Shown here one piece after another: positions 7,101-49,721 of a stretch of DNA of 64,000 nt. The stretch is from Oopsacas minuta (lineage: Eukaryota > Animalia > Porifera), in contig JAKMXF010000303.1 in NCBI GenBank assembly GCA_024704765.1, forward strand, positions 412,570 through 476,569, read 5' to 3'. The stretch's first letter is position 1. Each line of letters begins with the position of its first letter. The notes beneath the pieces are model-generated. The model was not told the origin of the DNA. It ran no database searches and saw only the letters and a list, made by a program, of their open reading frames with translations. A program made the translations under genes and the position numbers.

Positions 7101-10100
7101 TGTGGACTACAACTCAACATGGATTATCTATTAGAGCTGCTATGGGATAAACTCTCACTCATGCGGATATACACTAAGAAACGTGGTCAGCCACCTGATT
7201 TCACTGACCCTCTGATCCTGAGGAGTGGAGCTACAGTAGAGCACGTGTGTCATGCTATTCATAGGACAATAGCAGATACCTTCAGATACGCATTGGTGTG
7301 GGGTATATCTACTAAGTATAGCCCGCAGAGGGTGGGGAAAGCACATGTAGTCAGTGATGAAGATGTTCTGCAAATTGTTAAGAAGTGAACAAGTTGGTTA
7401 TAAGCGAGATCTTATGTGAGCAAATATATTAATTAGTTTATATTATCAATCTTTTAAGTAAATAAATAGTATAGTGTATATGAATATCATAGGTAAAGGA
7501 ATTAGAAATGAATTACTTCGCAAACAAATGAATACAATTTGTAAATTAGAATAACATACATGCAGCGAAGATAAAACAGTAGACTCCGCTTAATAGTAAA
7601 GGTGTTGGCCCGATTAACCGACATACTTTATTCCACTCAATAGGGTCAAATAGCCTGGTCCCGATGTGACCCTTTTAAACGGAGTCTACTGTATCCAAAT
7701 TGCATAGATTTCCACTACACGATTATAATTATTAAAAATCTCAATTGTTGTTTGTTTGTTTGTTTGTTTGTCTGTTGACAAGGAAAGGATTTACGGTATG
7801 CAATTTTGAAATTGTCACATAACTATGTATTATCGTGTTTATCAAAGAAGTGAATAGAATTCAATAAAACTTCACTAAATATATCAAACATACGAATCCG
7901 ATTTTCACACTTTTGGATTAATCATATGTAAATTTATTGTTGTTTTTATGAAAATAAAACAAATTTCAAAATTGAGGTAGAATCACACTTTCAAAGGCTA
8001 TACAGGAGTAATCGAGTATGCCGAGTCCGAATATAGTATTGTAAACAATATATTGTGAATATTTGTTTACTTTTAGGTACATAAAATAAACAAATTTCAA
8101 TATTGTTGTAGAATCATACTTTCAACGATTGTACCGGCATACTTGAGTATGCTGAGTCTGAATATTGTAAACAACATCAATATCATTAAATCTCAATTGT
8201 TGTTTGTCTGTTTGTTGACCGTTGAAAACCTCGAGGCGCAATGTGCCGAGTTCATCGCGAAGCGACGAGCCAAAGACTCGTATTTATAAAAATTGGTTCT
8301 GATTATCTATTATTATGCGAATATAATTTTTATAGGAAGAATGGGAAAGCAGTGCAAGTAGAGCTAAACTATTTAATTAATTATAAATAAACATTTAATT
8401 GTTAAATAAAACATCATTCGAGATAATTTGATTTGTTTCAAATAAAAGGCATTCTAGCAACTCCTACCCTACAGCATGGAACAAAGCGAAAGTGAAGCTA
8501 AACTAACAGAAGCTAAGTCTATAATAGGAATAGTTATAGAAGCAGCTAGAGAGAGACTCAGAGAGGTTAGCAATAAGATATGGGAGAACCCAGAAATAGC
8601 AATGGAGGAAGTAAAGGCACATTTTCTTTTAACAAATTTCTTAGAAAAAGAAGGATTTGAAGTAGAGAGATCATTTGTATTGAAGACAGCATTCAGAGCT
8701 ACATTCTACACTCCAGCTAGTAAGACTGATGCTACAGCTGTCAACGCTTGTATAGTGTGTGAGTATGATGCATTACCCGAAATAGGACATGCTTGTGGAC
8801 ACAATCTCATAGCAGAAGCAGGACTAGCTGCTGCTATTGGTATCAAAGCAGTGATGGAGAAGTATCCAGATCTCAAACTCAAGTTAACTGTCATGGGTAT
8901 GTAGACGTTTATACTATAATGAGCAAATTATACTTTAGTAAAGTGGCCCAGTGCTAAATTGACTGCGTTCGTAACTAGCAATGCGGATAACCAATGTATA
9001 GCTTAACATACTTAATATTCGTGAGGTGGCGGGCAAATACTGATTAATTAATAAGCTATTCACTCTTTACAAAGGTACCCCAGCTGAAGAAGGTGGAGGC
9101 GGCAAGATCCACTTGATAAGAGGAGGAGCATTCAAAGGTGTTGACTTTGCTATGATGGTTCATCCGTTTCCATTCAATGCAATATACCCTAATGTGCTAA
9201 GTGTAGTCCGGATTAATATCGTGTACAAAGGTAAATCAGCTCATGCAGCAGCATTCCCATGGGAGGGAGTGAATGCTTTGGATGCAGCAGTGAGTGGATA
9301 CACATCTGTGTCTCATATGCGACAGCAATTGAAGCCTGCATGGCGAGTTCATGGTATTATTACCAATGGAGGAATAAAACCGAATATAATACCGGAAATA
9401 GCAGCAATGAACTATTATTTGCGAGCACCGAACAACCTGGAGGTGGAAGAGCTCAGGCATAAAATTTGTGGGTGTCTTCAGGTAAATATACTCTCGTTTA
9501 TGATACGTAATTCCGAGTACATCTGATTAGAGGACAAGTACTATGTGAAATATCAATTGCATACATGGACTAATAATTTTTAGTAAATACATAAGGAAAT
9601 AAGGATAGAAGTATGAACATAGACCGTTCCTGATCATAGAACTTCAACTTTACCAAAGAAATGACATAATATCACTGTAGTAACATTGTGGCCAAGTTTG
9701 ATCATATGACCATAAGTTGAGAAACCCTTCTATCTATTATATAACCGTTGAGAGCTAATCTTTCACTAAGATAAAAATAAATTTTACAAATAGTTACCAG
9801 TACTGGTTACGTGAAAATACTTAATTAGTACACAAGGATAAACGTAATGATTATCTAAACTAGGCAGGAGCTACAGCTACAGGATGCACAGTAGAGATTT
9901 TGGAAAATGATATTCCTTATTCTAATATGAAGTCTAATTCAATCCTGGGAGAGTTATACCGTAGTAATGTAATGCCGGGGATAAAGTACGGAGACATAGA
10001 GTCAGATAGGAATACACCTAGCTTCTCTACAGACATGGGGGATCTGTCTTATCAAGTTCCTAGCATACATCCTACCTATTCTATCAATACTAACTATCCT

Positions 10101-13100
10101 AATCACACCAGTGGATTCACTGATGATGCCAACACGTCTGAATCTCACGAGCTTACTCTGAAAGCAGGTGTGTGTATGGCTCGTACAGCTGTTGAGGTAG
10201 TGTTCAAGCCAGGAGTATTAGAGCAGATTAAACAAGAGTTCAGTAAACAGTAATTAGATAATACGTACAAATATTATTAATTGATTAGTCATTATACTTA
10301 TATACTCGTATAACTGTTAATAATGTCTAGTGGTAATAACCAGGCGGAAGTTCCTATTGGAAGGGTGAGTAAGGATAATCAGACAATTGAGCTATGTAAA
10401 TGTATTGTCATGAAACAGGATCGGGAACACACAATGCAAAACCAAGTATTTGATCGGGTATTCAAATTTAGACAAAATAAGAGCAATTAGAGCTCGGTAC
10501 ATTGTTCGAGGAGCGTGGAGCAAGGGCATAAAACAATTTCCTACAGAAATAAATAATTAGCAACTCCTACAGCATGGAACAAAGCGAAAGTGAAGCTAAA
10601 CTAACAGAAGCTAAGTCTATAATAGGAATAGTTATAGAAGCAGCTAGAGAGAGACTCAGAGAGGTTAGCAATAAGATATGGGAGAACCCAGAAATAGCAA
10701 TGGAGGAAGTAAAGGCACATTTTCTTTTAACAAATTTCTTAGAAAAAGAAGGATTTGAAGTAGAGAGATCATTTGTATTGAAGACAGCATTCAGAGCTAC
10801 ATTCTACACTCCAGCTAGTAAGACTGATGCTACAGCTGTCAACGCTTGTATAGTGTGTGAGTATGATGCATTACCCGAAATAGGACATGCTTGTGGACAC
10901 AATCTCATAGCAGAAGCAGGACTAGCTGCTGCTATTGGTATCAAAGCAGTGATGGAGAAGTATCCAGATCTCAAACTCAAGTTAACTGTCATGGGTATGT
11001 ATTCTCCATATTTAATTTGTGCACAGTACATTTCTTTCGCTAGTTGCTTGGTGATGTGAAGCAACTGAACAACAACCACTCAGCGGATTCGTTTTAAAAT
11101 GACCAGAATGTATCCCATCGTTCTGCGGGCAGAATTTGTGATATATATTAATTTATTCGATTTCACTTACAAGACAGGGTCCAGGGAGAATTAGGTTCCC
11201 AGTGTTGAAACTAGAGGATAACTAGTGGACTGATCTTCAGAGAGAGAGAGAGGATCGATCCACCAGTTATCCTCTAATGATATTCACTTCTTACTAAATA
11301 TAGGTACTCCAGCTGAAGAAGAAGGATCAGGCAAGATCCACTTGATAAGAGGAGGAGCATTCAAGGGTGTTGACTTTGCTATGATGGTCCATCCGTTTCC
11401 ATTCAATGCAATATACCCTAATGTATTGAGTATAGTACAAATAGATATCGTGTACAAAGGTAAATCAGCTCATGCAGCAGCATTCCCATGGGAGGGAGTG
11501 AATGCTTTGGATGCAGCAGTGAGTGGATACACATCTGTGTCTCATATGCGACAGCAATTGAAGCCTGCATGGCGAGTTCATGGTATTATTACCAACGGAG
11601 GAATAAAACCTAATATAATACCGGAAAAGGCAGAACTCACCTATGATCTACGAGCACCAAACAATTTAGAAATGGAAGAGCTCAGGAATAAAATTCATGG
11701 ATGTCTTCAGGTAAATGTAAAAGATCTCTCGTTATATGCCAGGAATAATATACGTACATCTTCGGATTCAAACAACTTTAATTTGGATGATAATTTTCTG
11801 AGAAACAGACAGACAACAAATGAGATTTAATAATAAAAATTAGATACGGATTAAGTACTCTACGCTTATGATACCGAATATGCGAGGCAAATTAATATTT
11901 TCGAAAAAAATTCATTTATTCGATCTTTTAAACTGTTGTTCCTAACCTTTTTGCTCCGTTAACCCTCTATTGATTCTTCCTTTTGTAATCTCCAATTAAA
12001 AGCCCGAAATTGGGAAACACGACCTTAGAGTATAAACGTAATGATTATCTAAACTAGGCAGGAGCTACAGCTACAGGATGTACTGTAGAGATTTTGGAAA
12101 AAGAGATTCCTTGCTCAAATATGAAGTCTAATTCAATCCTGGGAGAGTTATACCGTAGTAATGTAATGCCGGGGATAAAGTACGGAGACATAGAGTCAGA
12201 TAGGAATACACCTAGCTTCTCTACAGACATGGGGGATCTGTCTTATCAAGTTCCTAGCATACATCCTACCTATTCTATCAATACTAACTATCCTAATCAC
12301 ACCAGTGGATTCACTGATGATGCCAACACGTCTGAATCTCACGAGCTTACTCTGAAAGCAGGTGTGTGTATGGCTCGTACAGCTGTTGAGGTAGTGTTCA
12401 AGCCAGGAGTATTAGAGCAGATTAAACAAGAGTTCAGTAAACAGTAATTAGATAAACTTGACTATATTAGATTAGTTATTATACTTATACGTTATATGTG
12501 CTTAATAATATTATACCTCTATATATCCAGTATCTTCACCATCCTGAATAATAATATCAGCCCCTGTAGTACCAACATAATCTCCCCCATCAGAAGCAAT
12601 AGATAACATTAGTGGATCTGTCAGCTCTCTGATCTTCTCGTAATAACTACGTGAACTAGGTAAGGTTGTGGTTTGTGAGCTAATTACGTTGTAGAGGATA
12701 CAGCTGGTAGTTGAGTGAGACAGAGCTGCACAACTGTATGACGCTATACAGAGACGAGCACACTCTCTGAATGGCATAGAACTTCCACTGATGTCACTCT
12801 CCTGCAAAACATCCTGTGACCCTGTCAGCACTAGGGACTGAGGGCCTGTGAAGTAGTAGCTCTCTGTAATACTGAGATCTGCAAATGCTAGGTCGATAAT
12901 GTTCAGTTGTGTAGTGTTGTAAGTAATCTATAAGATTAATACAAATTAGGTGGTGTTTTATTATTAGCAATAATTTGTGCAAACGAATGCTTTTATTCCA
13001 ATTAATGTTATTCATCAAACCTAAGTTACAATATTTAACGAATAAAGTAAATATACATACCTGTAGGTCTCCAAGATTCCCAAATTCTCGCTTAAGTGCA

Positions 13101-16100
13101 ATCCTAGCAAGATAAGGCTGTTCTTCTTCTGGAATAATAAAATGAGTAGAGTTAAGAGACACGATTCCATGAGGTGCATCATTAGGAAGAATATTGATAG
13201 TAGCAATGCTAGCATCTCCTGCTCTAGCTCCTCCCGTTACGCTAGCAATCATTACCTCTACTGCTTCTAAGCCTTCTGGGATTGTGTCTGGTAATATCTA
13301 TTGGGATATGAATGTATATAATTTATATACAACATCACTATCAATCCAGTTATTAATCTGGAAAGTTTGAATACAAATCCATTCTAATAGCTAACGTAAG
13401 ATATAAGATTAGTTCTACCTGAATTGAGAAGGTATTTGTTCTCTCCTGGGTCTGAAATAGCTCCTCTCCACTAGTAATAGATATGTCAGCAGCAGCTGAC
13501 AAGCCCCCTCTTATCATTGCTTCCCAGGTAATACGTACAACTCCTTCAGCCCCTTCATATCTCTCCAGCACCAGGGATACGGATAGGGGGATGGACTGAG
13601 GCTCTTCAACTTCAATGGACCTAGTCTCAATAGAGAACCCGAACACACCATGAATGTCATCATTTTCAGAAATAGTCACAACAGTAGAGAAGTTAGTACT
13701 AGCTATACTAGCTCCGCCTGTGAGGGAGTAAAGCATAAAGTTATGTATATTTAACTGTTAAGAAATACAGTGAACTCAGATAAGATGTATCCCTTGTGAA
13801 AACAAATATTAATACGTTCAATCCCTATAGGGATTGAATTAAAATGAATGGAACTACATTTTTGGTTTGAAAAAAGTAATTATACGTCTTCTCCGAGTTC
13901 TACTGTACGTGTACACATACCACTGGGAGAAGTGAGTGAGACAGTAAACGTCTCATCAAACTCAGGATTGAGATCATCTGCTACAGTGAGTGGGAGTGCT
14001 GCTAGACTTGTTCCTTCTGTGAATGTCACCTGTCCGTTGAGTGATGAGAGATCGTTGAGAGCAGCTGTCACAAGAGTGACAGTATATCTGACAGCAACTG
14101 TACCAAATAACCCAGCACTTCTCCGTACGAATAAGAAGTTGCTAGCAGGCTCAGGCACTGTAAACTGGGTGGAAGTGAATGAGAATATTCCTCTCGCGTC
14201 ATCATTTTCTGAAATAGTTATCTCACTTATTGAAGCAGCTCCACTGTCGATCTGTAATCAAATAACAATTATTAAATCCTTGTACTCGTGAATATGATAA
14301 TAAATCTCCAGTACAGTTATTGGTTATTACCGTAGGTATAGCCATTCCTGGCTGTGGAGCAGATAGGAGCTCAGCTGATATCAGCAATACATCAAACCTT
14401 TCATCAGCTTCAGGGACTGTGTCATGTAGTACTGTTATATCTATCATGCGAGTTGTAATTCCACTCGTAAAGTCAACATAAGCTGTATCAATTTGAGTAT
14501 AGTCCTGATCAGGAGTAGCAGGATTTAGAGTAGGTATTGAGGTAGAGTAGTTTACACGGATATCTCCAGTAGTACCGAACTGTCTGTTAATCGTAAGTGA
14601 AAAAGTATTTCCTTCTTCTACTGTCACACTTCTCTGTCCAAGAGGGAAATTGAACAATCCATGAGGATAGTCACTAGCCTAGGTGAAGGCAATGAGAGAT
14701 TTATAGGAATCAAAATACACTACCCATGCAGTAGATACATCATATCCATAGGTATAAGAACATTAGGACAGAATATATAATTACTATTTGTAATACGTAA
14801 TTAATATTTCGTGACGTAATTTAATCCCATCTGAGGTGAGAGGGTTGTAAGCCCCAAGTGTGGTCAGAGGATATGCCTGGAAGCCTGGAGCAATTTGTGA
14901 TATAATATAATCAGCCTAGAATAGTCTTATTATAGTAGACTCCGCTTAATAGAGCCATCGGTTAATCGGGTCACTTCACTAAAAACAGAACCATACAAAT
15001 AATAGTGTTGAATTACTCCGCCGCTTAATCGGGTCAAAATAGCCTGGTGCCAATGCGACTGTATCTGTTTTTTCTTGTTAGTTAGGGCCGTCACCCCATC
15101 ACCTCACGTATTACTGCAGGGGAGGATGCTCGACACCACTACTACCATAACTAATCAGCTGTTCTTACCTGTATACTAATCATAACTTGTGTGTCTCCTA
15201 GAGAAGAGAGTCTAGCACCACCTGTCACATTGATAATCTCTACTTTAAACATCTCTAAGAACTCAGATATTTGATCTTGAATAATACTGAAATCTATTTC
15301 TCCATTATCAACACCGTCTGCGAAATACACAATGCCACTAGACGGAGATATGTCAGTGGGTCCATTAGACCCAGTCAGTGACCAATACAATGTAACGTCA
15401 CCCAGTAATCCCCCTGTCCGCTGTAGATATAAAGTAGTACTCACATCATCCTCACTAACCACTCTACTCAGAGAATCAGACCTGAAGGAGAACACTCCGA
15501 ATGCATCATCACTTGTTGCTATCGTAACATTTATGATATATCCTATCCCGAGAGAGGGTTTACCAGAGAGTCCCGTGGGATTAGATAGTATTACTTGGAA
15601 GGATTCTTCTAGCTCAGGAATAGCATCATCTACTAGTGTAATGGTGAGATATTGACTACGTTGTCCTTGTGAGAATGTTAGTGATCCTGCTGTGTTGATG
15701 TAGTCTCTGTCTGACCCGATTCCAAACGCGTCCAAACTACTGGTGAAGTATTCTACGCTAACCTGACCAACTGTACCCTGGAGAGTATACAATATATAAT
15801 GAGTTAGGTTGTGGATAATCGTGTACCCTATGTTTATATGTTATTCGTTTTTGCAAAAATTGGATGAGAAAATATACTACACATAAATCCGATATAAACT
15901 GATTAAGTACGCGAATGGTGCGGAATGTGCGGAAAAGTAAAATCTTGAATATCACCAACTAATTTCTATCATAGCTACCAGATTAAATAAAGTTTAGGGC
16001 AACCTACCTGTGCTCGTACAACTTGTAGAGAGATATTGACAGTCTCCTCACTAACAGTTATGACAGGTTGCTCTGTAGCAGCTTCTATGAACTGATTATC

Positions 16101-19100
16101 TTGTGCAGGAACTCCTGATGTATCAAACTGAAACAGACCGTATGGAGAATCATTCTCCTCTATCCTCAGACTAATGTTCTGTTCTGGAGGTGTGTTGATG
16201 TAGTAAGCAGATATAGGAGTGCTGGGGGTGGTTCCATCCTCTCCGGACAAACCTGTGATACAATGAACATTTCAATAAACTTATCAACCTCAGCATATAT
16301 TTGGCTGTGTTAGTTTAATGGACTTTTAGCCATAAGTATTACTTATCAAGGTATAGCCTATGACCAAGGCTAATCTGAAGTACCAATGTAATTAGATAAC
16401 GAAGATTTGTGGATTCAATTATTTTTTGAAAAATCAAACAGTTGGCATAAGCGAAGTCAATAAGGCTCGGATAAAGTCCAGGACGGCGGAGAACCATATA
16501 TTGAGTATGAGCTGAGAGTATGAGATATAGAGAAATAAGTATAGTAGACACATAATTCAATGTATTCAGAAACCTGTTAGCGTAACAACAAAGATCTCAG
16601 CAAGTTCAGGCAGCTCATCATCTACTGGAGTGAGTATAAGATTAGCTAAGGACTCTCCATCTGATAGAAGTACACGTCCAGTAGCTTCAGTGAAGTCTAG
16701 TGTGGCTAGAGTTAAGCCGTCAGATTGGTAAACTGACCAGTGGACATACACACCTCCCTGACTAGAGAAGGAGCGTGAGATTACTATAGAAGCTGTATTT
16801 GACTCGTCTTCTAAGCTAACGGGCTGGAGAGATTGGAACTCGAAAATTCCTACCAAATAAGTTGAATAGTAATAATTGCTAAATACATAGTTTTATAAAT
16901 ATCAAAGGTTGATATATGTAACTAACCATTGCCTGTGTCACTGGCTAGAATGTTAAAATTAGCAGATCTTTCTATTGGTAGGAATCTACCAAATCCCTTC
17001 AGATTGAGAATAGTGGGGTGTGTCACTTCGGTAGGTTCTACTATGTCATCTTCTCTAACACTAAATACCGGAGTAGATGCGTTGTTTTGGCCAATAGAGA
17101 AATTAGCATACCCAGATATAGGGGTCACATCTTGTGAAGGTGAGCTGATAGAAATGCTTTGAATCTATCGAGAGATTAGAATTGATAAACTATAATAGAC
17201 TACTTAATACATATCAGGGCTATAGGATTCATTAAAATAATGAATAGTTTATGAGTCAGTTCACAGAATAGCCTTGGATTCTTTAGAAGTGTTACTATAG
17301 GTAACATCAGTGGCGTAGCATGAGTGGGGCTGGTGGCTCGAAATTGTGGCGTATGATGTCATTACCTGGCGCAACGTGCCTGCGGAACTCTAACTCATTG
17401 GGTAGAAGCATGACCCAGAGGCCCGAGCTGCACTCCCAGTGTGTAGGCTGGAAATTTTATTATTCGTATGATATACGTAGTGAACATATCTACGTATTAA
17501 ATATGAATTAGTATATAAGCCCAGAAAGTCGGTTAATTAGGATAATAACGTGTAATTCAAGGCGATGAAGTAGTTCATCACGAAGTGACGAGCCTTCTGA
17601 CTTGTATACAATATTACATACAAATAACTGAAATACCTGAGCTAGAGATAGAGCAGCATAATATACTCTAACATCTTGGAGAGCTAGAGATACACCCTCA
17701 TTACCAGCTCCATCAGCTCCTATACTCATAACAGCATTACTGTCAGCTACTATACCCCCAGACATGAGACTGGTACTGACTAGCAGTACACCCCTAAAGT
17801 ATAACTTTGCCTCACGTGTTGGAGATGTCTGATGGACTACTGCTATATGAGACCAAGTGTCATTGAATGTGTCAACTGGTAATTCTGCCTCCACCGTATT
17901 AGTAGTAGTACTAGATGACGTCACAGTATATTCATACTGCAGATAACTGGTAGATCCTGATACTCGCATCTTAATACCATAATATACTACAGATACGTCA
18001 GTACTATGTCTAGCCATGATGAAACCTGAAGTAGCACTACCTTTGATGAAAGCACTGAGCGTAAATCCTCCCATTATGTCTGCTGGAGAGGGTTGGTATT
18101 GAGAAGGTACCGTTAGGAGTGAGTCAGATTGTCCAGAGAACAGATAAGCTAAGGTACCTGTATCAGACCTACTGGCGTATTGTGATACACCTGGACCTGT
18201 AATCCCGTAGAAGAACAGGTCTAGGAGAGGGGTTCCTCTCAACAGAGAGGGAGTCATCTCCCACACCAGCTCGGCAGCAGCTAGAGTACCTCCGTATTGA
18301 GACAAGTAGAGGACACGATCTCGTGAGGTGAGAGGAGCTCCGGGCAATAGGTCTTCCGGAATGTAAACATCCAAACTTTCCTCTGACCAGCCGTAAGCTC
18401 CATATGGATCATCATTCTCTGGGACTGTGAGTATACTCGTGAGATTATCAGCAGCACAGGAGGGCCCTGGATTGATGGGCGGGAACACAAATACCGGACA
18501 GTTAATAGAAATGTAGTACAAGTCCTCTAGCTCAGGGATACCATCATCTGATATAACAACAGTTACTGTAGTATTAGCACTACCATCTTGTATTATGACG
18601 TCACTAGAGAAAGACAAGTCCCCCATACTAGCAGGCAGATCTGGGTGGTTTGTGGATACGAGTACTAAGCTAAGTGTAATAATCAGCTGACCGAATGTAC
18701 CTCTTGTCCTTCTGATAACCAGATCTATACTCTCCCCCTCATCTCCAGTCACGATAAGGGATTGTGGATGGAAGGATACTATACCGTTAGGATCATCATT
18801 AGGAGCTATATACACAGATACATTGTAGGGTCTATCCACTACACTATCCCCGGTAGCATCGTATAATACAAAATAGAATCGTTCCTCTATTTCAGGAGCG
18901 TTATCATCTTGAATACCAGTTGATACTGTCTTCTCTCTATCACCCGATTCAAACACAATCAAGAAATCGTTGTAAGGAATATAGTCCTGATTCTCCAAGG
19001 CTGAATCCTGAATAGTACTAAGTTTAACAGTAGCCCTGTCCACTGCTTGACCTCCACGAGTAATAGTTACTTCAGCAGTAGAACCTTGTAACTCAGCTAC

Positions 19101-22100
19101 ATCCAGAGTTCTAGTAGTAAAAGTGATCGGGTCATCATTAGCTGATATTAACAGCTGTGCCTATAAAAGTGTAAATATTATAACAGATAGATTGACTCAT
19201 GCAGAGGGGGGGGGGGTAGGAAGCAAATTATGAGTGGTGGAGGCACTATAGCTGACAATGTTAATATATTGAAATTATCAATGCCCCATTCGAGATATAA
19301 ACATGAATATGTACCGTATTTCCCTGAATAAGCGCAAGGGCGCTTATTCTTCTCATGGCCATTTTTTCTTATAATTTTTTACAATTTTTGAAAATACGAA
19401 TGATTTGGGAATCTAATTATCCTAATTTGAAAGTGGTGGGTCATGTACCACCTCCTACAACTGTCATGATATATTCTCCAAAGCCAATTAATCCATAGTA
19501 TCATTGTATAACATTATCGTAAACATACTTGAGCCCTGTCTAGCTGGATGTCTGCTCCCCCTGTGGGAGAGGACAGCTGGAGAATCAGAACCTCTACATC
19601 TTCAGGTATATCATCTGGTAGGATAAATACACTAAAATCAGCATAATCCTCTCCCTCAGAGAACTGTAGTGTACCAAAAGTAGGAGTGACGTCATTACCA
19701 GCATTGAAAGAAGAGAAACTCCAATAAACACTCACATTACCAAATGTGCCTCTATCTCTGTTAACGCGAAACTGCACTGTATTATACTGAGAATTGTCAG
19801 TGACACTGGGATCTGTCTCAGAAGCAGATACAGTTATATCTTCGAATTGGAATACACCATAAGGATAGTCATTCTCAAGTATCGTGATAGCTGCCTGTGT
19901 AGGTTCAACAAGGATTGCATTCTGTGTTACCTGGAATAGTTAAAGGATATTATCAATAGTTAAATATTACCAACTTGTAGTTATGTTGCATACAGTCAAA
20001 TCCTGTTATTAACCGAGTACATATGTGACTACAGGTTCCGTATTATGAACTTTCAGGGGACCAAGAATTGTGTTCATAATCCAAATACTTCATAATAAGT
20101 GCACTCACCAAAATACGAATCCTAAGTGAATTGTTTCTAAAGGGTCATAGGGTTATTCACAATGAAAAAATGGTAATAATAATCAGGCCTGACTGTATCC
20201 AGTAGAATAATGAAAGATGAATGAACTTACTTGAGATATCGTGAGATTGAAATATTCCTCCAGTTCTGATAAATCGTCATCAAATGGAGTAATGATAAAC
20301 TCTTTAGTAGCCTCGTTAGCACTGATAATCTCAAACCCAGAATAATAGAAATCTCTAGGACCATTAGATGTTATCATATAGCTAACAATTTCATTGGTGA
20401 GCAGTGCTCCTGTCCTCATAAGGGTGAGTATAATGACGTCATTAGTTGTTTCAGAGACAACATAAGGTCCCACTGAATCAGGAGATAGACTTATAGTGCC
20501 TCCGGGTGTATCACTAGCTATTATTGTTACGAAACTACTAGAGCTAGCTCCGTTAATCTGCTGGTTCTGTTCACCAGATGCTATCAGGGTTACTACAAAT
20601 GTTTCTTCTAACTCAGGAATATCATCAGCTGTTACTAGAATCGTAAGATTTGTACTATTCTCTCCTTCAGCTAATATTATCGTATCAAACAGGTTCTGTG
20701 ATAAATCATCTTCACTGAAGGTGTCAGCAGCTGTAGCTTTAACTATGACATAGGATATGGTAGCCTGTCCAGCTGATCCGTCTCTCTCAATTGTCAGGTT
20801 TACCTACATAATACAACATATAGAATCATAGCATAGACAGTAACCCTGCTTGTGAGTATAGAGAAACAAGAGCTAGTCTGGAACAGTCGTTGCAGGTGTT
20901 GCAGTAATTCCATATTGCGCAACACTAGAATATCATTCTATATTTCCAAAAGTTCATTATTGTAAACCGCCTTAAGTAGATTTACTATTGTTAGAAATTC
21001 CCTCTAATGGGAATTCTTCATGTTATTAACGACTTAAAATTATTACACTACACTACTCAATATTTGATTATTTAATTATCTAAATATTCATAAATATTCA
21101 TAAATGTGTTCCTTCATTCCTTTGTGTCCTTATATCGTGCATATCAATAAACACAATAATTAAGGAAGAGATTCCATCTATAACCCAGGTGTTAACATTA
21201 ATATCCACAGCATAATAAATAGTAAATTTAGCTTATCTAAACTTCTTTAGAGGATTCTACACTGAGTTGTTCAGATAACAAACTGCATTAGTATCCCATT
21301 AAGTTGACAGTTAACAAAGTATTAAATTCTTATAATAGTGCAGATAGGTAAGTATGTAAAATTTGAATGACTCTTAATAACAGGAGAATTAAGGTGCCCA
21401 AACCTGTATATAATATACCGTATTTGTTTGAATGCTCCTAGCGCTTGGCAAACAAGGCTCCAATACTTGTAAACAAAGATTGAGACAAAATTTATCACCA
21501 CATTCTAGAAAAATTTTCTTGAAGAAATTTACGTCTCATCTGGCTATGCACCAAATCAGGGTAATAAGTTTCCCAAAATCACTTGTAATTCAATAATTGT
21601 AAAAATACAATTTTGAACATACAAATTATATTGAGCGTATGCCCAATATAATTCGGAAAATAAAGAATAAATTTCACTTCTGAATGGACACTGAATATAT
21701 TTATACAACACACACAGTAAAATACGATTCAAAAATTTATAGATCCGAGGGCCCCAGATTTCCTACCACTGGTGTAGAAGAATGCGATGACGAAAACTAG
21801 AATTAATTCTTAAAATGCAAGGAGGATCTATGATACTTACGGTGAGTAATTTAAATCTACTTAATTAACTATAATACACTGGTACAAATATTTAATCAAG
21901 ATGCTGGTATGCTACGTGATAGTACAATTACACACCAGTTAAAAGCTGGGTAGGGACGTCCCTGTAATACTACTTATCAATGCAAATTAATTTAAAATAA
22001 ATCACTTACAGTGGTGGGCTGGGTAGAAGTTCCCTCATCTATTGATAAAAGTCTTGATGCCTCTGTGAATCCGATCCTACCGTTGATAGCCTCCTCAGGT

Positions 22101-44654: not shown

Positions 44655-45257
44655 TTAAACTGTCTCTAGAATGTGAACCATATCTCTAATCTGCTTAGCA
44701 AAGTTGTGGAACTCAGGTAGCGACAGAGAGAACGAGTGTGTGGTTACCTGTCCGTCTGGGTTTGAAACCTTAAGTCTTACATCAACTCTAGCACTAGTCA
44801 GGTTCTTACAGCTGCTGCTACTAATAGCAACAGATAGCTTCCAATCAAAAGCAACAAGTTTACCAATACTCAGATCTGTAGGAGTTTGTAAACTTTCAAT
44901 AAGTGTACTGCCCTCACTCTCCCAGACCTCCTGGAACACCTGCAACTTATCTTGACTCAGGAGTAGCACTTGTTTCAGATCACTCACTAAATGAGCAGAG
45001 GTAGCTTTAACTTTCGCTCCACACTCAAATATAAACTGAATACTATCCATTACAGCTGATATTGTTTGTCCTACTGGTTCCACATAGTAGAAACACATTT
45101 CTTGATAGTATTCAGTATTCAGGAAGGTAGCAGAATGAGTTATCCAAGCTATTACATCTTGACACATCTCTAACAACAGACCTGAAGGAATGGCATTTAT
45201 AGCCTCTCCCGTTTCAACTAGTCCACGAGGGATATCTTTCAATACTTTGAGTGGCAT
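44655..45257 (-). CDS. COMMD6: COMM domain-containing protein, COMMD6-like C-terminus with a full N-terminal helical domain (200 aa, intronless)
   Basis: LVAFDWKLSVAISSSSCKNL...LKVSNPDGQVTTHSFSLSLPEFHNFAKQIRDMVHILETV matches the COMMD6 COMM domain, including the terminal ETV. Confidence 0.8.
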   Translation of the reverse strand: MPLKVLKDIPRGLVETGEAINAIPSGLLLEMCQDVIAWITHSATFLNTEYYQEMCFYYVEPVGQTISAVMDSIQFIFECGAKVKATSAHLVSDLKQVLLLSQDKLQVFQEVWESEGSTLIESLQTPTDLSIGKLVAFDWKLSVAISSSSCKNLTSARVDVRLKVSNPDGQVTTHSFSLSLPEFHNFAKQIRDMVHILETV

Positions 45258-45689
45258 ATTTATCGAATATATCCTGTTATCTAATTCACTAGATTAATTA
45301 GAGATTAAGATAAGTTATATAGCGTATGTATCAACGGATGTGATAAATAAGAATATATTTGGAGAAGTTCATACAAAAATATCAAAATATAATTAATACC
45401 AAATAAAGTGCCTCTACTATCTGTATCATAAGTTTGAGCTATTTTTAAGCTGATTATAAAAAATTGCATTTTCTGTGTTGAATTCTCAAAAATTGAAGAT
45501 AGCCCCAAAAGTCAAAACTCACAATCCTAGTCACTTACTCATTACTCATAAGTCATAACTTGCTTGAATGATTGTTATCAACAAATACAAATTCAACCAT
45601 TTTGAGGCAAATAATGAGAACATCAGAAATTTCAATGTAAATATCATTTGGCACTCAGCCATTAGTGTATTTTAGGAGCATAAATGTAA

Positions 45690-46110
45690 ATCCGCATGCG
45701 GAATCTAAGAGATATTAAATAAATATATCCGCATGCGGAATCTAAGAGATATTAAATAAGTATATCCGCATGCGGAATCTAAGAGATATTAAATAAGTAT
45801 ATCCGCATGCGGAGTCTAAGAGATATTAAATAAGTATATCCGCATGCGGAATCTAAGAGATATTAAATAAGTATATCCGCATGCGGAGTCTAAGAGATAT
45901 TAAATAAGTATATCCGCATGCGGAATCTAAGAGATATTAAATAAGTATATCCGCATGCGGAGTCTAAGAGATATTAAATAAGTATATCCGCATGCGGAAT
46001 CTAAGAGATATTAAATAAGTATATCCGCATGCGGAATCTAAGAGATATTAAATAAGTATATCCGCATGCGGAGTCTAAGAGATATTAAATAAGTATATCC
46101 GCATGCGGAA
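45690..46110. repeat. Minisatellite, 11 full units plus 1 partial unit of 37 bp, each carrying the 12-bp palindrome TCCGCATGCGGA
   Basis: Unit ATCCGCATGCGGA(A/G)TCTAAGAGATATTAAATAAGTAT starts at 45690, 45727, 45764 ... 46097. There are no spacers. Confidence 0.95.
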
Positions 46111-46332: not shown

Positions 46333-47805
46333 CTATAGAATTTCATCAGTACGAGAATACTTTACGAGAAGTTCGTAATTCTTCTCAACTAACTGAACCG
46401 CTTCTTCTACAGTATCAAAGTATTCAACATATTTCAGCTGGCGTCGATCGGAAGAACCCTTCATTAGCTCCCAAGAGGTCTCTAGCACAACCTGCCAAGG
46501 ATCCCTACACGCGATTATAGCTCTAGGAAATCCTGGGACAGAATATAGAGCATCTACTGTTGTCATCCCCAATCCTACTAAGAGCTCTGCGAGAGTACCC
46601 ACTCCACCTGGCATTGCTATTAAGATGGATGAATCCTCCACCAATTTATCCGTCCTTTGGTTGAGACCATGAGTTATATACCTCTTTGACATACTCTTGT
46701 TTCCTTTAATATTTCGGAAGAATAGAGTTGGTGATAGTATTCCTTCTGACATGTACTCGCCACTGCATTTCTTTTCTCCTATAATTGCGCCAGAATTAGC
46801 AGCTTCCATTATCCCAACATAGGCTCCTGTTATTACTTTAAATCCCTTAGAAGCAATTGACAATGCTATCTCGTGAGCTATCTTATAAGCATGTACATCC
46901 GGTTTGGTGTCTCTACCCCCGAATATAGCTACTCGTTTAGGAGGAGTCCTTACAGCATATCTCATGTCTGTTAGACGTAGTATATCCAGAAAGCGACTCT
47001 CCTCATATACACTGAGAGATCCTATCTTGTAAGCATTGTGTATGAGCTGACTAGCTTCATTGAGATTTATAGATAATGTTCTCATAATGTCTGAGAGAGG
47101 TTCTGTGTCAGTAGATTCTCTGCTCAAGCAGAAACAGATCCCTCTTCCAAAGAGCAAATGTAATATATTACTAACTACTTCTAACTCATTCTGTTTGACT
47201 GATAATGTGAGTTTGTAATGAGATGGAAGTTCATTGAAAATGTCTTCCAATTCCGCCTGACTAACTGTAGATAAATCTTGTAATAAGATTCTGTTAGTTG
47301 GGAGAATAGGAAAATCATTTGTAGACAGTTTTACCAACTGTTCAGCTCTAATCACTATACATGATATTTGAGCACCACTTCCTTGTAACTCCTCAATAAT
47401 TTCATTGGAATGTTGTATAGTTTCAAAATCTACACAAAACCCTGCGAATAGGTCACGCCAGAGCTTAGAGATAGACAAGTTTAATTTCAAATTGAGTGAA
47501 TTTGGGTATTTACAAACGAATCTACATCCTGTAGTGAGTGAGCTCATTTTCTGAGAACATATTTGACGTATTTTGCTAAACGTTCTATCCAACTCCCCTT
47601 CTGACGTCAGGAGACTAAGATCTTTGAGTAGGAATTCAGTATACAATAGTTTGTGATAAGGACATTCTTCTAGGTATTCTTGTAACCAAGTTGAGAATGC
47701 TTTGTCACTCTGGACGAATGCGGGTGAGATGTATAACTCTAATTTTGGAGCAGTCCACAGATAGAAGTTTACTCTATCTTCTATCTTAATGGGTTTGATA
47801 GCCAT
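46333..47805 (-). CDS. Two-domain protein (490 aa, intronless): degenerate adenosine-deaminase-like barrel plus LOG/SLOG nucleotide phosphoribohydrolase domain
   Basis: The C-terminal aa ~289-480 has the LOG hallmarks VAIFGG, VITGAYVGIMEAANSGA, LNQR and PGGVGTLAE. The N-terminal aa ~12-280 aligns by eye with ADA/cog1816 landmarks: PKLELYIS, LEVVSN, GICFCLSRES, NAYKIGSLSVYEESRFLDIL. Confidence 0.8.
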   Translation of the reverse strand: MAIKPIKIEDRVNFYLWTAPKLELYISPAFVQSDKAFSTWLQEYLEECPYHKLLYTEFLLKDLSLLTSEGELDRTFSKIRQICSQKMSSLTTGCRFVCKYPNSLNLKLNLSISKLWRDLFAGFCVDFETIQHSNEIIEELQGSGAQISCIVIRAEQLVKLSTNDFPILPTNRILLQDLSTVSQAELEDIFNELPSHYKLTLSVKQNELEVVSNILHLLFGRGICFCLSRESTDTEPLSDIMRTLSINLNEASQLIHNAYKIGSLSVYEESRFLDILRLTDMRYAVRTPPKRVAIFGGRDTKPDVHAYKIAHEIALSIASKGFKVITGAYVGIMEAANSGAIIGEKKCSGEYMSEGILSPTLFFRNIKGNKSMSKRYITHGLNQRTDKLVEDSSILIAMPGGVGTLAELLVGLGMTTVDALYSVPGFPRAIIACRDPWQVVLETSWELMKGSSDRRQLKYVEYFDTVEEAVQLVEKNYELLVKYSRTDEIL

Positions 47806-48534
47806 TTGTTGAATACGAAACTTGGTTAATTTCGTAGAGCTAATGTATGATTGTTAGTTACAAACTTACAATACGCAAAATACATGTAGCTGAAGTTATG
47901 CTGTAATTCGTATTAGAACTATACAATGCTGTCAGCGAGTGGGATGTAGTGGTGTGTTAGGCTAACCGGAGTAGGTATTAACCAGAGAATTGAAAAACCA
48001 TTGTAACCTGATTTTGCGTAAATATTTGTGCAAATAATGCTATTCTGTCAGTACAGATTCTATATTTTTAGTGTAGCTCCTATGGGGAGATGCCCTAATT
48101 AGTATCATGGACGGTGTACGAGTACTATCTCTGTCCGCTTCGCCGTGGCGAAATCTAGTAGTCCGATATCTATTGATTTTTTCACACCTTTTGGTGATTA
48201 ATCATATTTTCACACATTTCTATGCATAATTTAAAAGCATGCTGGAGATTATGTTTCAACTTGTCAGGGGTAATTATTCAGTGCGTAAAGTTCAACTTTG
48301 AATTTTCAAAGCCTAAAAAAATACATGAAAATGCGATATCTAGGAATTACGAAATTCGATTTCAAAATAGCAGACAAAATCCTTTGGTTGACAACGAACA
48401 TACTGACAGACAAAGATTATAATTTAATAATATAGATATACGTATAGGAGCTAAGATATTCAACCTGACTGTACAGTATGTATTTCCTGGAAGTTGACAC
48501 TTGTACCATACGATACGTAACTGGGCAATTTCTG

Positions 48535-49333
48535 GAAAAGAAGTGAATGTGCATAAATTCTCTTTCATGAAGATCTGTATCTCTACTCTCGATCCATGGT
48601 CCCAATAAGTACACTGTACTTTTTGTAGAGGACACTCATCAGTTAAATGGAAAGGGACATCTCTCCACTTCACCTGTTTGGTCCCTTCCTCTCTTTCTAG
48701 CACATATACATTCGGACAAGGAACTGGATACTCACAGTCCTCCAAATGATGATTCATCTCACATGCCTTCACTTTTTCGAGACAGAATTCACAGATCAGT
48801 TCTCTCAAGGAACACGAGTCTCTAATCAGTCTCTAATCAGTCTCTTCTCCAGGTTCATAACTTTCCCTTTCCCCTCTCCTTCTAGACAGACACACCCCAG
48901 AGGACACGGTACAGGAAAGAACTCACATTCCTCCAAGTGGTGTAGTGTTGTACTGACTGTGTCTCTCCATTCACATGCTCTGCTCTTTAGGGGGGACTTA
49001 ATCTATAAAATAACTCAATTGTAAATACAAACAAACATTTGTAACTAACAACTAATAATCTACTATTTTATTGTTGACAATTACACGATTCATTTTTACA
49101 GGTTGCCATGGTATACCCTCAGGAATGTAGACGCCACATCTCAATTCTCCTTGATAGAGACAAGCTTCCCTCAGTAATCCTTTACAGCAGTTAAGTAGTA
49201 ATAATTGTTCTTCCACTTTACTGGATAAGTTTTCTACCAACAATTCTACCCTCCAGCCTCTATAGCTACCATTCTCTGTCTTTACGTAGACCAACTCCTC
49301 TCTTCCTTCTGAGTCATCTAACATATCTGCCAT
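48535..49333 (-). pseudogene. TRAF-type zinc-finger gene fragment, disabled
   Basis: Exon 49333-49064, 61-bp intron, then an exon from 49002 with TRAF-ZF-like Cys/His motifs (HHLEECEFFPVPCPLGC, HHLEDCEYPVPCPN, HLTDECPLQKVQC). An 11-bp duplication at 48818-48839 shifts the frame into a TGA, and there is a second frameshift near 48590. Confidence 0.7.
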
Positions 49334-49400
49334 TCTACAATCTATAATGTATTATTTGCTATGACAAAAGACAATTTCTAAGTAGTTACACAAACAAATA

Positions 49401-49721
49401 CAGTCAACATCCGCTATCTCGAATGCCGGTTATCCCGAACTCTTTTCTTAGGATAGACTTATAAGTTGCAATAGAGTACAATAGTGTTCAGTTGAATATT
49501 TGTAATTTATAGTATAATTTGAAAGATAATATAGTAATATGCAATTTAGTACATGGTTAATTAGAGGCATGTCATTTCATAGCTCATCCAGGGATAAAGA
49601 AGGTAGGCAGCCCTAAATGATCCAGAACCACTGCATTAAATGGAAGCCATCCGTTAACTTGAACATCGCCATCCCGAACAGATTTTGATTTCCCCTCAGG
49701 GTTTGTTGACTCACTTGACTG
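49401..49721. mobile_element. MITE flanked by TA
   Basis: TA|CAGTCAACATCCG ... TTGACTG|TA; related to 63336-63494. Confidence 0.55.

What the first reader, a model, noticed from the sequence alone, without database searches (positions are those of the whole stretch)
46333..47805. Fusion of a catalytically dead adenosine/adenine-deaminase barrel with an apparently active LOG phosphoribohydrolase in an animal genome
Seen: the C-terminal domain keeps the LOG catalytic pair, Arg384 (LNQR) and the Glu of PGGVGTLAE (aa 399-407). The N-terminal domain tracks ADA landmarks in order, but every catalytic group is substituted: PKxELHxH to PKLELYIS, HAGE to SVKQ, LEVCPxSN to LEVVSN (with the preceding strand apparently deleted), SDD to RES. 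The terminal NAxxxSFLxxEEKxxL pattern is kept. Established: LOG enzymes cleave AMP or N6-substituted AMP to base plus ribose-5-phosphate (cytokinin activation in plants) and are typical of bacteria, archaea, plants and fungi rather than animals. ADA-family relatives deaminate N6-methyl-AMP (ADAL/MAPDA) and cytokinins. Inference: the dead barrel may act as a purine-sensing or channelling module controlling release of modified adenine bases, an undescribed purine salvage or signalling unit, possibly horizontally acquired (intronless) and now flanked by host genes.
Basis: partly seen in the sequence, partly recalled or inferred. Interest (0 to 1): 0.85.

Follow-up and report, generated by a model that had tools for sequence, protein, structure and literature searches.

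The report
Dead deaminase barrel fused to LOG
A glass-sponge gene encodes a two-part protein, found almost only in glass sponges, that joins a zinc-less adenosine-deaminase-like barrel to a LOG-type nucleotide-cleaving domain whose catalytic core is intact but whose base pocket is altered; what it does is untested.

Summary
The observation largely holds. Window 46333-47805 (-) is an intact, intronless 490-aa ORF in Oopsacas minuta, a glass sponge.

LOG domain (residues 286-490): it passes the Pfam cut-offs and matches type-II LOG structures. The catalytic Arg384, the phosphate-binding Thr404 and Glu407 are invariant in the family. Two adenine-contact residues that are essential in CgLOGII are replaced, and a Tyr sits in the GGGPG loop. 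The substrate is therefore probably not plain AMP or a cytokinin nucleotide.

N-terminal domain (residues 1-285): it has no sequence hit in Pfam, PDB or 1.84 billion proteins. AlphaFold models it at modest confidence as an eight-stranded barrel. In four structure libraries that model is closest to adenosine/adenine deaminases. All zinc and catalytic positions are replaced in all seven full-length members.

Selection and origin: both domains are under purifying selection (dN/dS about 0.1-0.2). Only eight family members were found, and they share gene order with eukaryotic neighbours. There is no bacterial donor and no compositional anomaly, so horizontal transfer is unsupported. Expression could not be tested.

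Prior records: the 490-aa protein and a truncated 404-aa model named "Deaminase" are already public. This scan also noted the same fusion on other pieces of this genome (s1-290536, s1-211809), one with a reported frame break (s1-290605).

Verdict: a new domain architecture built from known parts; moderate interest.

The parts
46333..47805 (-). Complete intronless CDS, 490 aa plus stop: the ADA-like/LOG fusion protein
   Evidence: ORF listing. It aligns full-length to six orthologs without frame breaks. dN/dS is 0.07-0.21 among the hexactinellid-type orthologs, rising to about 0.3 against the divergent P0008 where synonymous sites are saturated.
46951..47805 (-). N-terminal domain, aa 1-285: a (beta/alpha)8 barrel, closest to the adenosine/adenine-deaminase branch of the amidohydrolase fold, with no metal ligands
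47545..47805 (-). Codons 1-87. Residues 1-86 are absent from the public 404-aa gene model, which starts at M87, yet they are conserved and code for barrel strands beta1 and beta2
   Evidence: P0001 starts at MSSLTT, which is M87. dN/dS for residues 1-86 is 0.11-0.17. P20, K21, E23, L24, E57, L59 and D62 are invariant.
47725..47748 (-). PKLELYIS (aa 20-27): remnant of the ADA beta1 motif PKxELHxH, with both zinc histidines replaced (Y/F/L and S/A across the family)
   Evidence: The ADA profile consensus is LPKxELHxH.
47116..47142 (-). GICFCLSRE (aa 222-230): strand beta8. S228 and R229 are invariant where ADA has NTDD
   Evidence: hhalign pairs ADA "VTxNTDD" with "FYLSRx". Residue table.
46951..47064 (-). 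Two conserved helices (aa 248-285) between barrel and LOG core. They carry the ADA-like C-terminal pattern N257..S263..E268..L273, but structural matches to type-II LOGs also claim them, so the domain boundary is ambiguous
   Evidence: Secondary structure. hhalign runs to residue 280. LOG-type AFDB hits start at query residue 235-263.
46336..46950 (-). LOG / SLOG domain, aa 286-490
   Evidence: Pfam PF18306 and PF03641 above their cut-offs. PDB type-II LOGs 5zi9, 5wq3 and 9us2. Foldseek TM by target 0.54-0.73 to the standalone LOG structures.
46813..46827 (-). GAYVG (aa 327-331): a derived version of the LOG GGGPG loop. Tyr329 is invariant in the fusion family but Gly in 116 of 117 standalone LOGs
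46651..46656 (-). R384-T385: the catalytic Arg (Arg155 of CgLOGII) is kept; the neighbouring Lys156 equivalent is replaced by Thr (Cys in P0008)
   Evidence: Alignment to 5wq3. Mutagenesis data in PMC5379747. Family table.
46585..46611 (-). PGGVGTLAE (aa 399-407): the nucleotide-phosphate-binding and catalytic motif. P, G400, G403, T404 and E407 are invariant, G401 is S/T in most members, and the Asp177 equivalent is A/T/L

Best explanation
This is a vertically inherited sponge gene for a two-domain cytosolic protein, apparently confined to glass sponges.

The C-terminal domain is a divergent member of the LOG family of nucleoside 5'-monophosphate N-glycosidases. It keeps the phosphate-binding loop and the Arg/Glu catalytic pair. 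It most likely still cleaves a nucleoside monophosphate into a base and ribose 5-phosphate. Its base pocket is remodelled (Tyr in the glycine loop, Lys to Thr, Asp to Ala/Thr, Phe to an aliphatic residue). The preferred substrate is therefore probably not AMP or a classical cytokinin nucleotide.

The N-terminal domain is a shortened (beta/alpha)8 barrel that most probably descends from an adenosine-deaminase-type amidohydrolase. It has lost every zinc ligand and catalytic residue, so it cannot deaminate. It is nevertheless under the same purifying selection as the LOG domain. It therefore acts as a non-catalytic module: a scaffold or oligomerisation unit, or a ligand-binding regulator of the LOG domain. 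Known parallels are the flanking regulatory domains of the LOG-family enzyme PpnN and the inactive dihydroorotase-like domains that other enzymes keep as structural partners.

Shown here: the ORF, the domain identities, the residue states, the selective constraint, the restricted distribution and the synteny. Inferred: retained hydrolase activity, ADA ancestry of the barrel, and the regulatory or scaffold role.
For: LOG domain:
- Pfam and PDB sequence hits and fold matches.
- R384, T404 and E407 are invariant across seven full-length members down to 39% LOG-domain identity. The corresponding CgLOGII residues are essential (PMC5379747).

Barrel:
- Alternating strand/helix units in two AF2 models.
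- ADA-family proteins recur or dominate in Foldseek PDB (TM by query 0.42-0.53, mostly 9-16% identity) and AFDB clusters (about 8 of the top 30).
- The top two Atlas rows are PF00962 clusters with 256-259 of 285 residues aligned.
- In the VIA re-ranking about 35 of the top 50 entries are ADA-family.
- ADA entries give the longest alignments in the Foldseek-independent VIA search.
- hhalign against a 13-sequence ADA profile is collinear over 238 columns. No shuffle out of 300 gives 200 or more columns.
- 9 of 13 single ADA sequences align in the same register, against a maximum of 7 in 40 shuffles.
- Motif remnants are invariant: PKxEL on beta1, YxE on beta2, and the C-terminal N..S..E pattern.

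Loss of catalysis: residue table.

Constraint: dN/dS is 0.12-0.21 for the barrel and 0.10-0.12 for LOG in the least saturated pairs.

Vertical inheritance: one clade with 100/98 support, conserved synteny, and host-like GC3.
Against: - The AF2 models are of modest confidence (pLDDT 62-67, from 7-8 sequences). Strand beta1 and the last 25 residues score below 50.
- The ESM Atlas's own model of the same residues instead matched phosphate-binding barrels (ThiE/TenI, Rpe, TrpA) at TM 0.50-0.59.
- The hhalign score is marginal (P 0.023, probability 2%). Shuffles reach it in 2 of 150 and 5 of 150 trials.
- Single ADA sequences, apart from E. coli Add, score no better than non-TIM controls.
- The register test is partly circular.
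- Two residues needed for CgLOGII activity are replaced, and TIGR00730's curated cut-off is not reached (46 against 96 bits). The LOG domain could therefore be a binder rather than an enzyme.
- No expression evidence was obtained.
Confidence: 0.6

Rival explanations
1. The N-terminal barrel is not ADA-derived. It is a divergent phosphate-binding TIM barrel (ThiE/TenI, ribulose-phosphate epimerase, TrpA or HisA type) that binds or processes a phosphorylated sugar, for example the ribose 5-phosphate released by the LOG domain. That would make the protein a two-step enzyme.
For: - The ESM Atlas model of residues 1-285 matched TMP-TENI, Ribul_P_3_epim, Trp_syntA, PRAI and DHquinase clusters at TM 0.50-0.59.
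- Full-length Foldseek hits included THI6 and TrpC.
- His_biosynth clusters also appear in the AF2-model Atlas search at TM about 0.50.
- S228 and R229 are invariant at the C-terminal end of beta8, a position that could bind phosphate.
- The domain is 285 aa, closer in size to these small barrels than to ADA (330-360 aa).
Against: - With the AF2 model, ADA-family matches have higher TM (0.62-0.63 against 0.50) and align 256-259 residues against about 200.
- They dominate the VIA re-ranking and recur in AFDB clusters.
- E. coli TrpA, TrpC, HisA and HisF gave only 8-15-column hhalign matches.
- The PKxEL, YxE and C-terminal motifs are ADA-type.
Confidence: 0.17
2. The LOG domain is a non-catalytic SLOG-type ligand sensor, as in Thoeris ThsA or the TRPM N-terminus. 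The whole protein would then be a signalling or immune-type receptor built from two pseudoenzymes.
For: - The best Pfam hit is a SLOG family, PF18306.
- The full-length model aligns to ThsA, although only at TM 0.24.
- Cad1, a CARF-adenosine-deaminase immune effector, tops the VIA re-ranking for the barrel.
- The Lys156 and Asp177 equivalents, needed for CgLOGII activity, are replaced, and the glycine loop carries a Tyr.
- TIGR00730 scores far below its cut-off.
Against: - The Arg, Thr and Glu of the catalytic and phosphate motif are invariant across members as divergent as 39% identity. That is what a retained enzyme would show.
- About half of the nearest standalone LOGs also lack Lys/Asp (an L/L/Y class), so those positions define subfamilies rather than activity.
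- PADLOC gave nothing meaningful: best hit PsyrA at E 0.0026, and nothing for P0008.
- It is a single-copy, syntenic, slowly evolving gene, unlike typical fast-evolving immune families.
Confidence: 0.15
3. The gene was recently acquired by horizontal transfer from a bacterium or archaeon, or it is symbiont contamination in the assembly.
For: - It is intronless.
- The nearest LOG domains are prokaryotic (CPR and DPANN types) at 30-36% identity.
- The literature read here records LOG activity in bacteria, archaea, algae, fungi and plants, and does not mention animals (PMC11228631).
Against: - No prokaryote nests with or beside the fusion clade, and the stem length is 2.57 substitutions per site.
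- No prokaryotic protein carries the N-terminal domain.
- GC 0.387 and GC3 0.334 match the neighbouring COMMD gene (0.406 and 0.348).
- The flanking genes are eukaryotic: COMM domain, and in the orthologous loci EAP30, choline kinase, F-box and Arf.
- Genomic read depth is even with the flanks.
Confidence: 0.05

Closest known systems
Type-II (hexameric) LOG phosphoribohydrolases: CgLOGII/Cg1261 (5WQ3), TtLOGII/TT1465 (1WEK), S. coelicolor 5ZI9
   Same: They are the best sequence and fold matches of aa 284-476. They share the Rossmann-like fold, the PGGxGTxxE motif, the catalytic Arg and Glu and the phosphate-binding Thr, and have a helix preceding the core.
   Different: - Identity is only 20-26% (Foldseek alignments to type-II LOG structures).
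- The Lys156, Asp177 and Phe152 equivalents are replaced.
- The GGGPG loop has become G[GA]Y[VF]G.
- There is a poorly modelled segment of about 35 residues (350-386) in the beta3-beta4 region.
- It is fused to a 285-aa barrel, whereas known LOGs stand alone.
- Activity is untested.
PpnN / YgdH (pyrimidine/purine nucleotide 5'-monophosphate nucleosidase; 6GFL, 9HS1)
   Same: A LOG-family catalytic core embedded in a larger protein. Its extra domains regulate it allosterically by (p)ppGpp binding, according to the PDB titles and my own knowledge of the 2019 Mol Cell study. This is a working analogy for "LOG core plus regulatory module".
   Different: The flanking domains of PpnN (DUF4478, DUF3412) are unrelated to a TIM barrel. 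NF038390 scores 32 bits against a cut-off of 450. The sponge protein is not a PpnN ortholog.
Adenosine/adenine deaminase family (PF00962): ADA1, ADA2/ADGF, ADAL/MAPDA, bacterial Add, Cad1
   Same: They are the best structural neighbours of aa 1-285 in four libraries. The sponge domain has the same strand order and keeps remnants of the beta1 PKxEL, beta2 YxE, beta4 G..(D)..E and C-terminal N..[AS]S[FL]...E motifs.
   Different: - There is no Pfam hit.
- All four zinc ligands and the catalytic Glu and Asp are replaced in every member.
- The domain is 45-75 residues shorter, mainly after beta1.
- It cannot be a metal-dependent deaminase.
Catalytically inactive amidohydrolase-fold domains kept as structural partners (fungal CAD dihydroorotase-like domain, Pseudomonas PyrC', CRMP/DPYSL proteins)
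   Same: Conceptually the same outcome: an amidohydrolase barrel that has lost its metal site but is conserved as a scaffold or regulator. This comparison comes from my own knowledge and was not tested here.
   Different: They come from a different branch of the superfamily (dihydroorotase/dihydropyrimidinase), have different partners, and have no LOG domain.

Membership tests
LOG family (PF03641 / IPR031100) | Profile HMM match above the curated threshold | tested here: met
   PF03641 scores 34.6 bits against a cut-off of 27, and PF18306 scores 39.4 against 26.3. The stricter NCBIfam TIGR00730 subfamily model is not reached (46 against 96.35 bits).
LOG family (PF03641 / IPR031100) | PGGxGTxxE nucleotide-binding motif | tested here: met
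   PGGVGTLAE at 399-407. P, G400, G403, T404 and E407 are invariant in the family. The second Gly is S/T in 5 of 7 members.
LOG family (PF03641 / IPR031100) | Catalytic Arg and Glu (Arg155 and Glu178 of CgLOGII) | tested here: met
   R384 and E407 align to Arg155 and Glu178 and are invariant in all members. Their essential role is reported in PMC5379747.
LOG family (PF03641 / IPR031100) | Adenine-contact residues Lys156 and Asp177 (Glu in type I), required for AMP hydrolysis in CgLOGII | tested here: not met
   T385 (C in P0008) and A406 (T or L in the others). About half of the nearest standalone LOGs also lack them (L/L class), so this bears on substrate class rather than family membership.
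LOG family (PF03641 / IPR031100) | Phosphoribohydrolase activity (nucleoside 5'-monophosphate to base plus ribose 5-phosphate) | not testable with these tools
   Needs an enzyme assay.
Type-II LOG | N-terminal alpha1 helix that mediates hexamer formation | tested here: inconclusive
   A conserved helix at 266-283 precedes the LOG core, and LOG-type AFDB hits start at query residue 235-263. The same helices also align to the ADA C-terminus. The oligomeric state is unknown.
Adenosine/AMP deaminase family (PF00962) | Profile HMM or sequence-profile match | tested here: not met
   No PF00962 hit at E up to 1. The family profile found nothing in PDB at E up to 10. hhalign against a 13-sequence ADA profile gave P 0.023 and probability 2%.
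Adenosine/AMP deaminase family (PF00962) | (beta/alpha)8 amidohydrolase barrel with ADA-type topology | tested here: met
Adenosine/AMP deaminase family (PF00962) | Zinc ligands: HxH on beta1, His on beta5, Asp on beta8 | tested here: not met
   The positions are Y/F/L25, S/A27, I/V150 and E/D/Q/R/H/A230 across the seven full-length members (mapping).
Adenosine/AMP deaminase family (PF00962) | Catalytic Glu of HAGE and His of the beta6 motif (ERIGHG) | tested here: not met
   R/K/N/Q153 and Q/R/D176. The residue-level mapping rests on a low-confidence hhalign alignment, but no His, Glu or Asp is conserved anywhere near the ends of these strands.
Prokaryotic defence SLOG proteins (ThsA-like, PADLOC models) | Match to a defence-system profile | tested here: not met
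   The only hits are PsyrA at E 0.0026 over 50 residues and a chance hit to a Type I specificity subunit; P0008 has none.

The most novel reading that the evidence does not exclude
The zinc-less ADA-like barrel still binds a modified purine nucleoside or nucleotide through a rebuilt pocket (invariant D62, D118, S228, R229). It would gate or feed the remodelled LOG active site. Glass sponges would then have a dedicated enzyme that releases a modified free base, in effect a cytokinin-like or other base-type signal or salvage product, from its nucleotide. That would be a purine-derived signalling or detoxification unit with no counterpart described in animals.
Probability: 0.12. Interest if true: 0.8.

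Novelty: new variant of a known kind. Interest (0 to 1): 0.5.

Why it matters
- LOG-family nucleotide N-glycosidases have been characterised in plants, fungi, amoebae and prokaryotes. An animal lineage that keeps a conserved, probably active LOG domain is uncommon, and I found no description of one in sponges (0 papers).
- Neither exhaustive protein search found the pairing with a pseudo-deaminase barrel anywhere else.
- It adds a clean example of a metabolic enzyme fold being kept as a non-catalytic partner.
- If the remodelled base pocket turns out to select a modified nucleotide, it would point to an unknown piece of purine metabolism or signalling in one of the earliest-branching animal groups.
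- On a practical level, the public 404-aa gene model lacks the first two strands of the barrel, and the name "Deaminase" is misleading.

Tried and rejected
1. Building an ADA profile from the search for homologous proteins with E. coli Add and from the search for related loci on genome contigs. I replaced them with 12 diverse ADA genes fetched from plasmid records.

2. A fold search with the full-length model. It was dominated by the LOG domain and said nothing about the barrel, so I re-folded the barrel alone.

3. Expression. Both sequencing-run runs returned only unlabelled runs. Their contigs cover genes and intergenic DNA at even depth, so they are genomic DNA. There is no RNA evidence either way.

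4. Identifying the organism behind P0008 (Logan SRR2064712). A paper search found nothing. The contig is 2.2 kb with no poly(A) tail, so the organism remains unidentified.

5. Single-sequence hhalign controls. ADA sequences other than E. coli Add did not beat the non-TIM controls, so I do not claim sequence-level significance.

6. A defence-system reading: PADLOC was negative.

Full report
**1. What is in the sequence**

Window 46333-47805 on the minus strand is an uninterrupted ORF of 490 codons. The same 490-aa sequence is on record in NCBI and UniRef on a 476,569-bp contig. A shorter 404-aa model that starts at M87, KAI6662006.1, is named "Deaminase [Oopsacas minuta]". The source is therefore the hexactinellid (glass) sponge Oopsacas minuta.

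The flanks are eukaryotic. An intronless COMM-domain gene lies at 44655-45257 (PF07258, E 9.5e-16). A weak TRAF-type zinc-finger ORF lies upstream in repeat-rich DNA. GC and GC3 of the ORF (0.387, 0.334) match the COMMD neighbour (0.406, 0.348). Genomic read depth is even across the gene and its flanks.

**2. The C-terminal domain**

Residues 291-476 match PF18306 (SLOG cluster 4, E 5.8e-10) and PF03641 (E 2.5e-8), both above their gathering thresholds. They also match TIGR00730, well below its curated cut-off. The best PDB sequence hits are the type-II LOGs 5zi9 (E 1e-8) and 5wq3, N. meningitidis YgdH (9us2) and PpnN. The fold search agrees.

The alignment to CgLOGII (5wq3) pairs residues as follows:
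- R384 with Arg155;
- P399-E407 with 170-PGGFGTLDE-178;
- T404 with Thr175;
- E407 with Glu178.

In CgLOGII, alanine substitution of Arg155, Lys156, Thr175 or Glu178 abolishes activity, and D177A nearly does (PMC5379747).

Across the seven full-length family members, R384, T404 and E407 are invariant. The Lys156 equivalent is T (C in P0008) and the Asp177 equivalent is A, T or L.

I compared the family with the 117 nearest standalone LOGs. Three further positions set it apart:
- an invariant Tyr329 where 116 of 117 have the third Gly of GGGPG;
- an aliphatic residue where 116 of 117 have Phe152;
- Ser or Thr at the second Gly of PGG in five of seven members.

The standalone proteins themselves split into a K/D/E class and an L/L/Y class. 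These base-side positions therefore define subfamilies rather than activity.

My reading is that the ribose-phosphate-binding and catalytic core is intact and the base pocket is rebuilt. An active N-glycosidase is likely, but with a substrate that differs from AMP or cytokinin nucleotides. This is inference; no assay exists.

**3. The N-terminal domain**

By sequence, residues 1-285 hit nothing:
- no Pfam family at E up to 1;
- no PDB chain with a family profile at E up to 10;
- only the domain's own family in an exhaustive phmmer scan of 1.84 billion representative proteins.

AlphaFold2 with the small family alignment gives alternating strand/helix units that form a (beta/alpha)8 barrel. The full-length model has pLDDT 62. 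The domain-alone model has pLDDT 67 and pTM 0.67, with residues 1-31 and 261-285 poorly modelled.

With the domain-alone model:
- Foldseek on PDB returns adenosine/adenine deaminases (3lgd, 1uip, 3rys, 3iar, 3ou8, 4gxw, Plasmodium ADAs) at TM by query 0.42-0.53 and mostly 9-16% identity. They are interleaved with DAHP synthases at TM about 0.40 and 8% identity.
- AFDB clusters give ADA or adenine-deaminase domains in about 8 of the top 30.
- The Atlas shape search puts two PF00962 clusters first (TM 0.62-0.63, 256-259 of 285 residues aligned).

Against this, the ESM Atlas's own model of the same residues matched small phosphate-binding barrels at TM 0.50-0.59. The fold is therefore robust, and the family assignment is probable rather than certain.

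**4. Sequence-level test of the ADA link**

I built a diverse ADA profile from E. coli Add plus 12 plasmid-borne ADA genes at 21-36% identity. Its consensus shows LPKxELHxH, HAGE, ERIGHG, CPTSN, NTDDP and NxxEASF.

hhalign of the family profile against it gives one collinear alignment of 238 columns (family 33-280 against ADA 77-337). The score is only 23.8 (P 0.023, probability 2%). Column shuffles reach that score in 2 of 150 trials and block shuffles in 5 of 150. None of the 300 shuffles gives 200 or more aligned columns.

As single sequences, only E. coli Add ranks above the controls. Those controls were TrpA, TrpC, HisA, HisF, three other amidohydrolases and six non-TIM proteins.

However, 9 of the 13 ADA sequences place their best local alignment within about 3 residues of the same register. 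These alignments fall in four different parts of the barrel. In 40 block-shuffled queries the mean was 1.3 and the maximum 7. The reference register came from the same data, so this test is partly circular.

The invariant motif remnants fit ADA:
- P20-K21-x-E23-L24 before beta1;
- Y-x-E57 on beta2;
- G122..E128 on beta4;
- S228-R229 at the end of beta8, where ADA has NTDD;
- N257..S263..E268..L273 in the last helices.

I put ADA ancestry at about 70%.

**5.

Right: beta1 (PKLELYIS), beta8 (about RES) and the C-terminal pattern.

Wrong:
- HAGE does not map to SVKQ at 203-206. In both the model and hhalign, ADA beta5 corresponds to residues 147-153, and SVKQ follows beta7.
- LEVVSN lies in a helix, and ADA's CPTSN aligns near 193-199.
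- No strand is deleted. The shortening relative to ADA is roughly 40-55 residues after beta1.

Whichever register is used, no His, Glu or Asp is conserved at the ends of strands 1, 5, 6 or 8. The positions read Y/F/L, S/A, I/V, R/K/N/Q, Q/R/D and E/D/Q/R/H/A. As a zinc deaminase the barrel is dead in every member.

**6. Constraint, distribution and origin**

In the least saturated ortholog pairs, dN/dS is 0.12-0.21 for the barrel and 0.10-0.12 for the LOG domain. For residues 1-86, which the 404-aa public model omits, it is 0.11-0.17. The barrel is therefore functional, and the full 490-aa reading is the correct gene model.

The family has only eight members in 5.8 billion clustered proteins:
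- O. minuta itself.
- Six sequences at 56-70% identity on contigs of 13 kb to 1.5 Mb.
- One at 30% identity on a 2.2-kb contig of unknown origin (P0008).

Five of the six related assemblies share parts of the order EAP30, choline kinase, two small genes, the fusion, F-box, Arf. None of these neighbours lies in the O. minuta window, so the locus has been rearranged in that species. That the related assemblies are other glass sponges is my inference from identity and gene content.

A maximum-likelihood tree of the eight LOG domains with 117 nearest standalone LOGs puts the fusions in one clade (support 100/98). The clade sits on a stem of 2.57 substitutions per site and has no prokaryotic sister. 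The nearest named sequences are CPR bacteria and DPANN archaea at 30-36% identity.

So there was a single origin of the fusion, no identifiable donor and nothing that suggests a recent transfer. A very old transfer cannot be excluded, because eukaryotic LOGs were not available for the tree.

**7. Mechanism**

- Most likely (about 0.6): a LOG-type nucleoside-monophosphate N-glycosidase with an altered base pocket. It is permanently attached to a pseudo-deaminase barrel that scaffolds or regulates it.
- Rival (0.17): the barrel is a phosphate-binding TIM barrel acting on a sugar phosphate.
- Rival (0.15): the LOG domain is a non-catalytic SLOG sensor.
- Rival (0.05): recent horizontal transfer or contamination.

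**8. What could not be done**

- Expression. The runs found are genomic DNA.
- A residue-level structural superposition, because model coordinates are not exposed.
- Identification of the P0008 organism.
- Examination of the second copy. Other notes of this scan report the same fusion on other pieces of this genome as a 1474-nt version with a frame break at a UGA (s1-290536, s1-211809, s1-290605).

On that last point, the contigs of runs X2 and X3 that span 47477/47572-47965 each carry one gap relative to the window. A GGGG run and an out-of-frame TGA lie at about codons 66-70. An indel there would explain why the older public model starts at M87. I did not verify this.

**9. Verdict**

It is a new domain architecture made of known parts, restricted to a small animal lineage, with a plausible but untested biochemical role. 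Interest 0.5.

Noticed in passing
window 45686-46110: A tandem array of 11.5 copies of a 37-bp unit (97% matches). Each unit contains the palindrome CCGCATGCGG. The array lies between the fusion gene's stop codon and the COMMD gene. A contig from the roughly 4-5% diverged relative (run X5) skips 45711-46084, so the array is absent or collapsed there.
   Followed up: partly
window 48017-48370 and 48548-49432: Genomic contig depth jumps from about 190 to 2,000-19,000 in runs X1-X3, with many loose ends at 48066, 48099, 48180 and 48219. These are high-copy repeats or transposon fragments. The weak TRAF-type zinc-finger ORF (48362-48808) and the 93-aa ORF at 49052-49333 largely overlap them, so they may belong to a multi-copy family rather than being a single host gene.
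   Followed up: no
window 47545-47805 (and the public protein KAI6662006.1): The public 404-aa model named "Deaminase" starts at M87 and omits 86 conserved residues (dN/dS 0.11-0.17). Other scan notes report a 1474-nt copy with a frame break at a UGA on another piece of this genome. A GGGG run and an out-of-frame TGA lie at about codons 66-70, and the X2 and X3 contigs over 47477/47572-47965 each carry one gap relative to the window.
   Followed up: partly
L101:6001-7092 (P0007) and upstream L101:1-5323: In one related assembly the ortholog lacks roughly the first 134 residues. tblastn finds only residues 135-170 of the N-terminal query. Upstream lie large ORFs of 852 and 810 aa without Pfam hits. 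This could be an insertion that truncated the gene, or an assembly-edge effect, since the locus is at the start of a 1.5-Mb contig.
   Followed up: partly
L002:14854-17466 and 21160-21470: Next to the ortholog in one related assembly there are duplicated GH18/EndoS-like TIM-barrel genes (97% identical over 131 aa, in inverted orientation) and a Tc3-type transposase fragment.
   Followed up: no
P0009-P0125 (standalone LOG proteins): The nearest standalone LOGs fall into two active-site classes. About 62 have K/D/E at the Lys156, Asp177 and Glu181 positions of CgLOGII. About 54 have L/L/Y, and these include many of the CPR- and DPANN-named sequences. The second class lacks residues that are required for AMP hydrolysis in CgLOGII, so it may have a different substrate.
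   Followed up: partly
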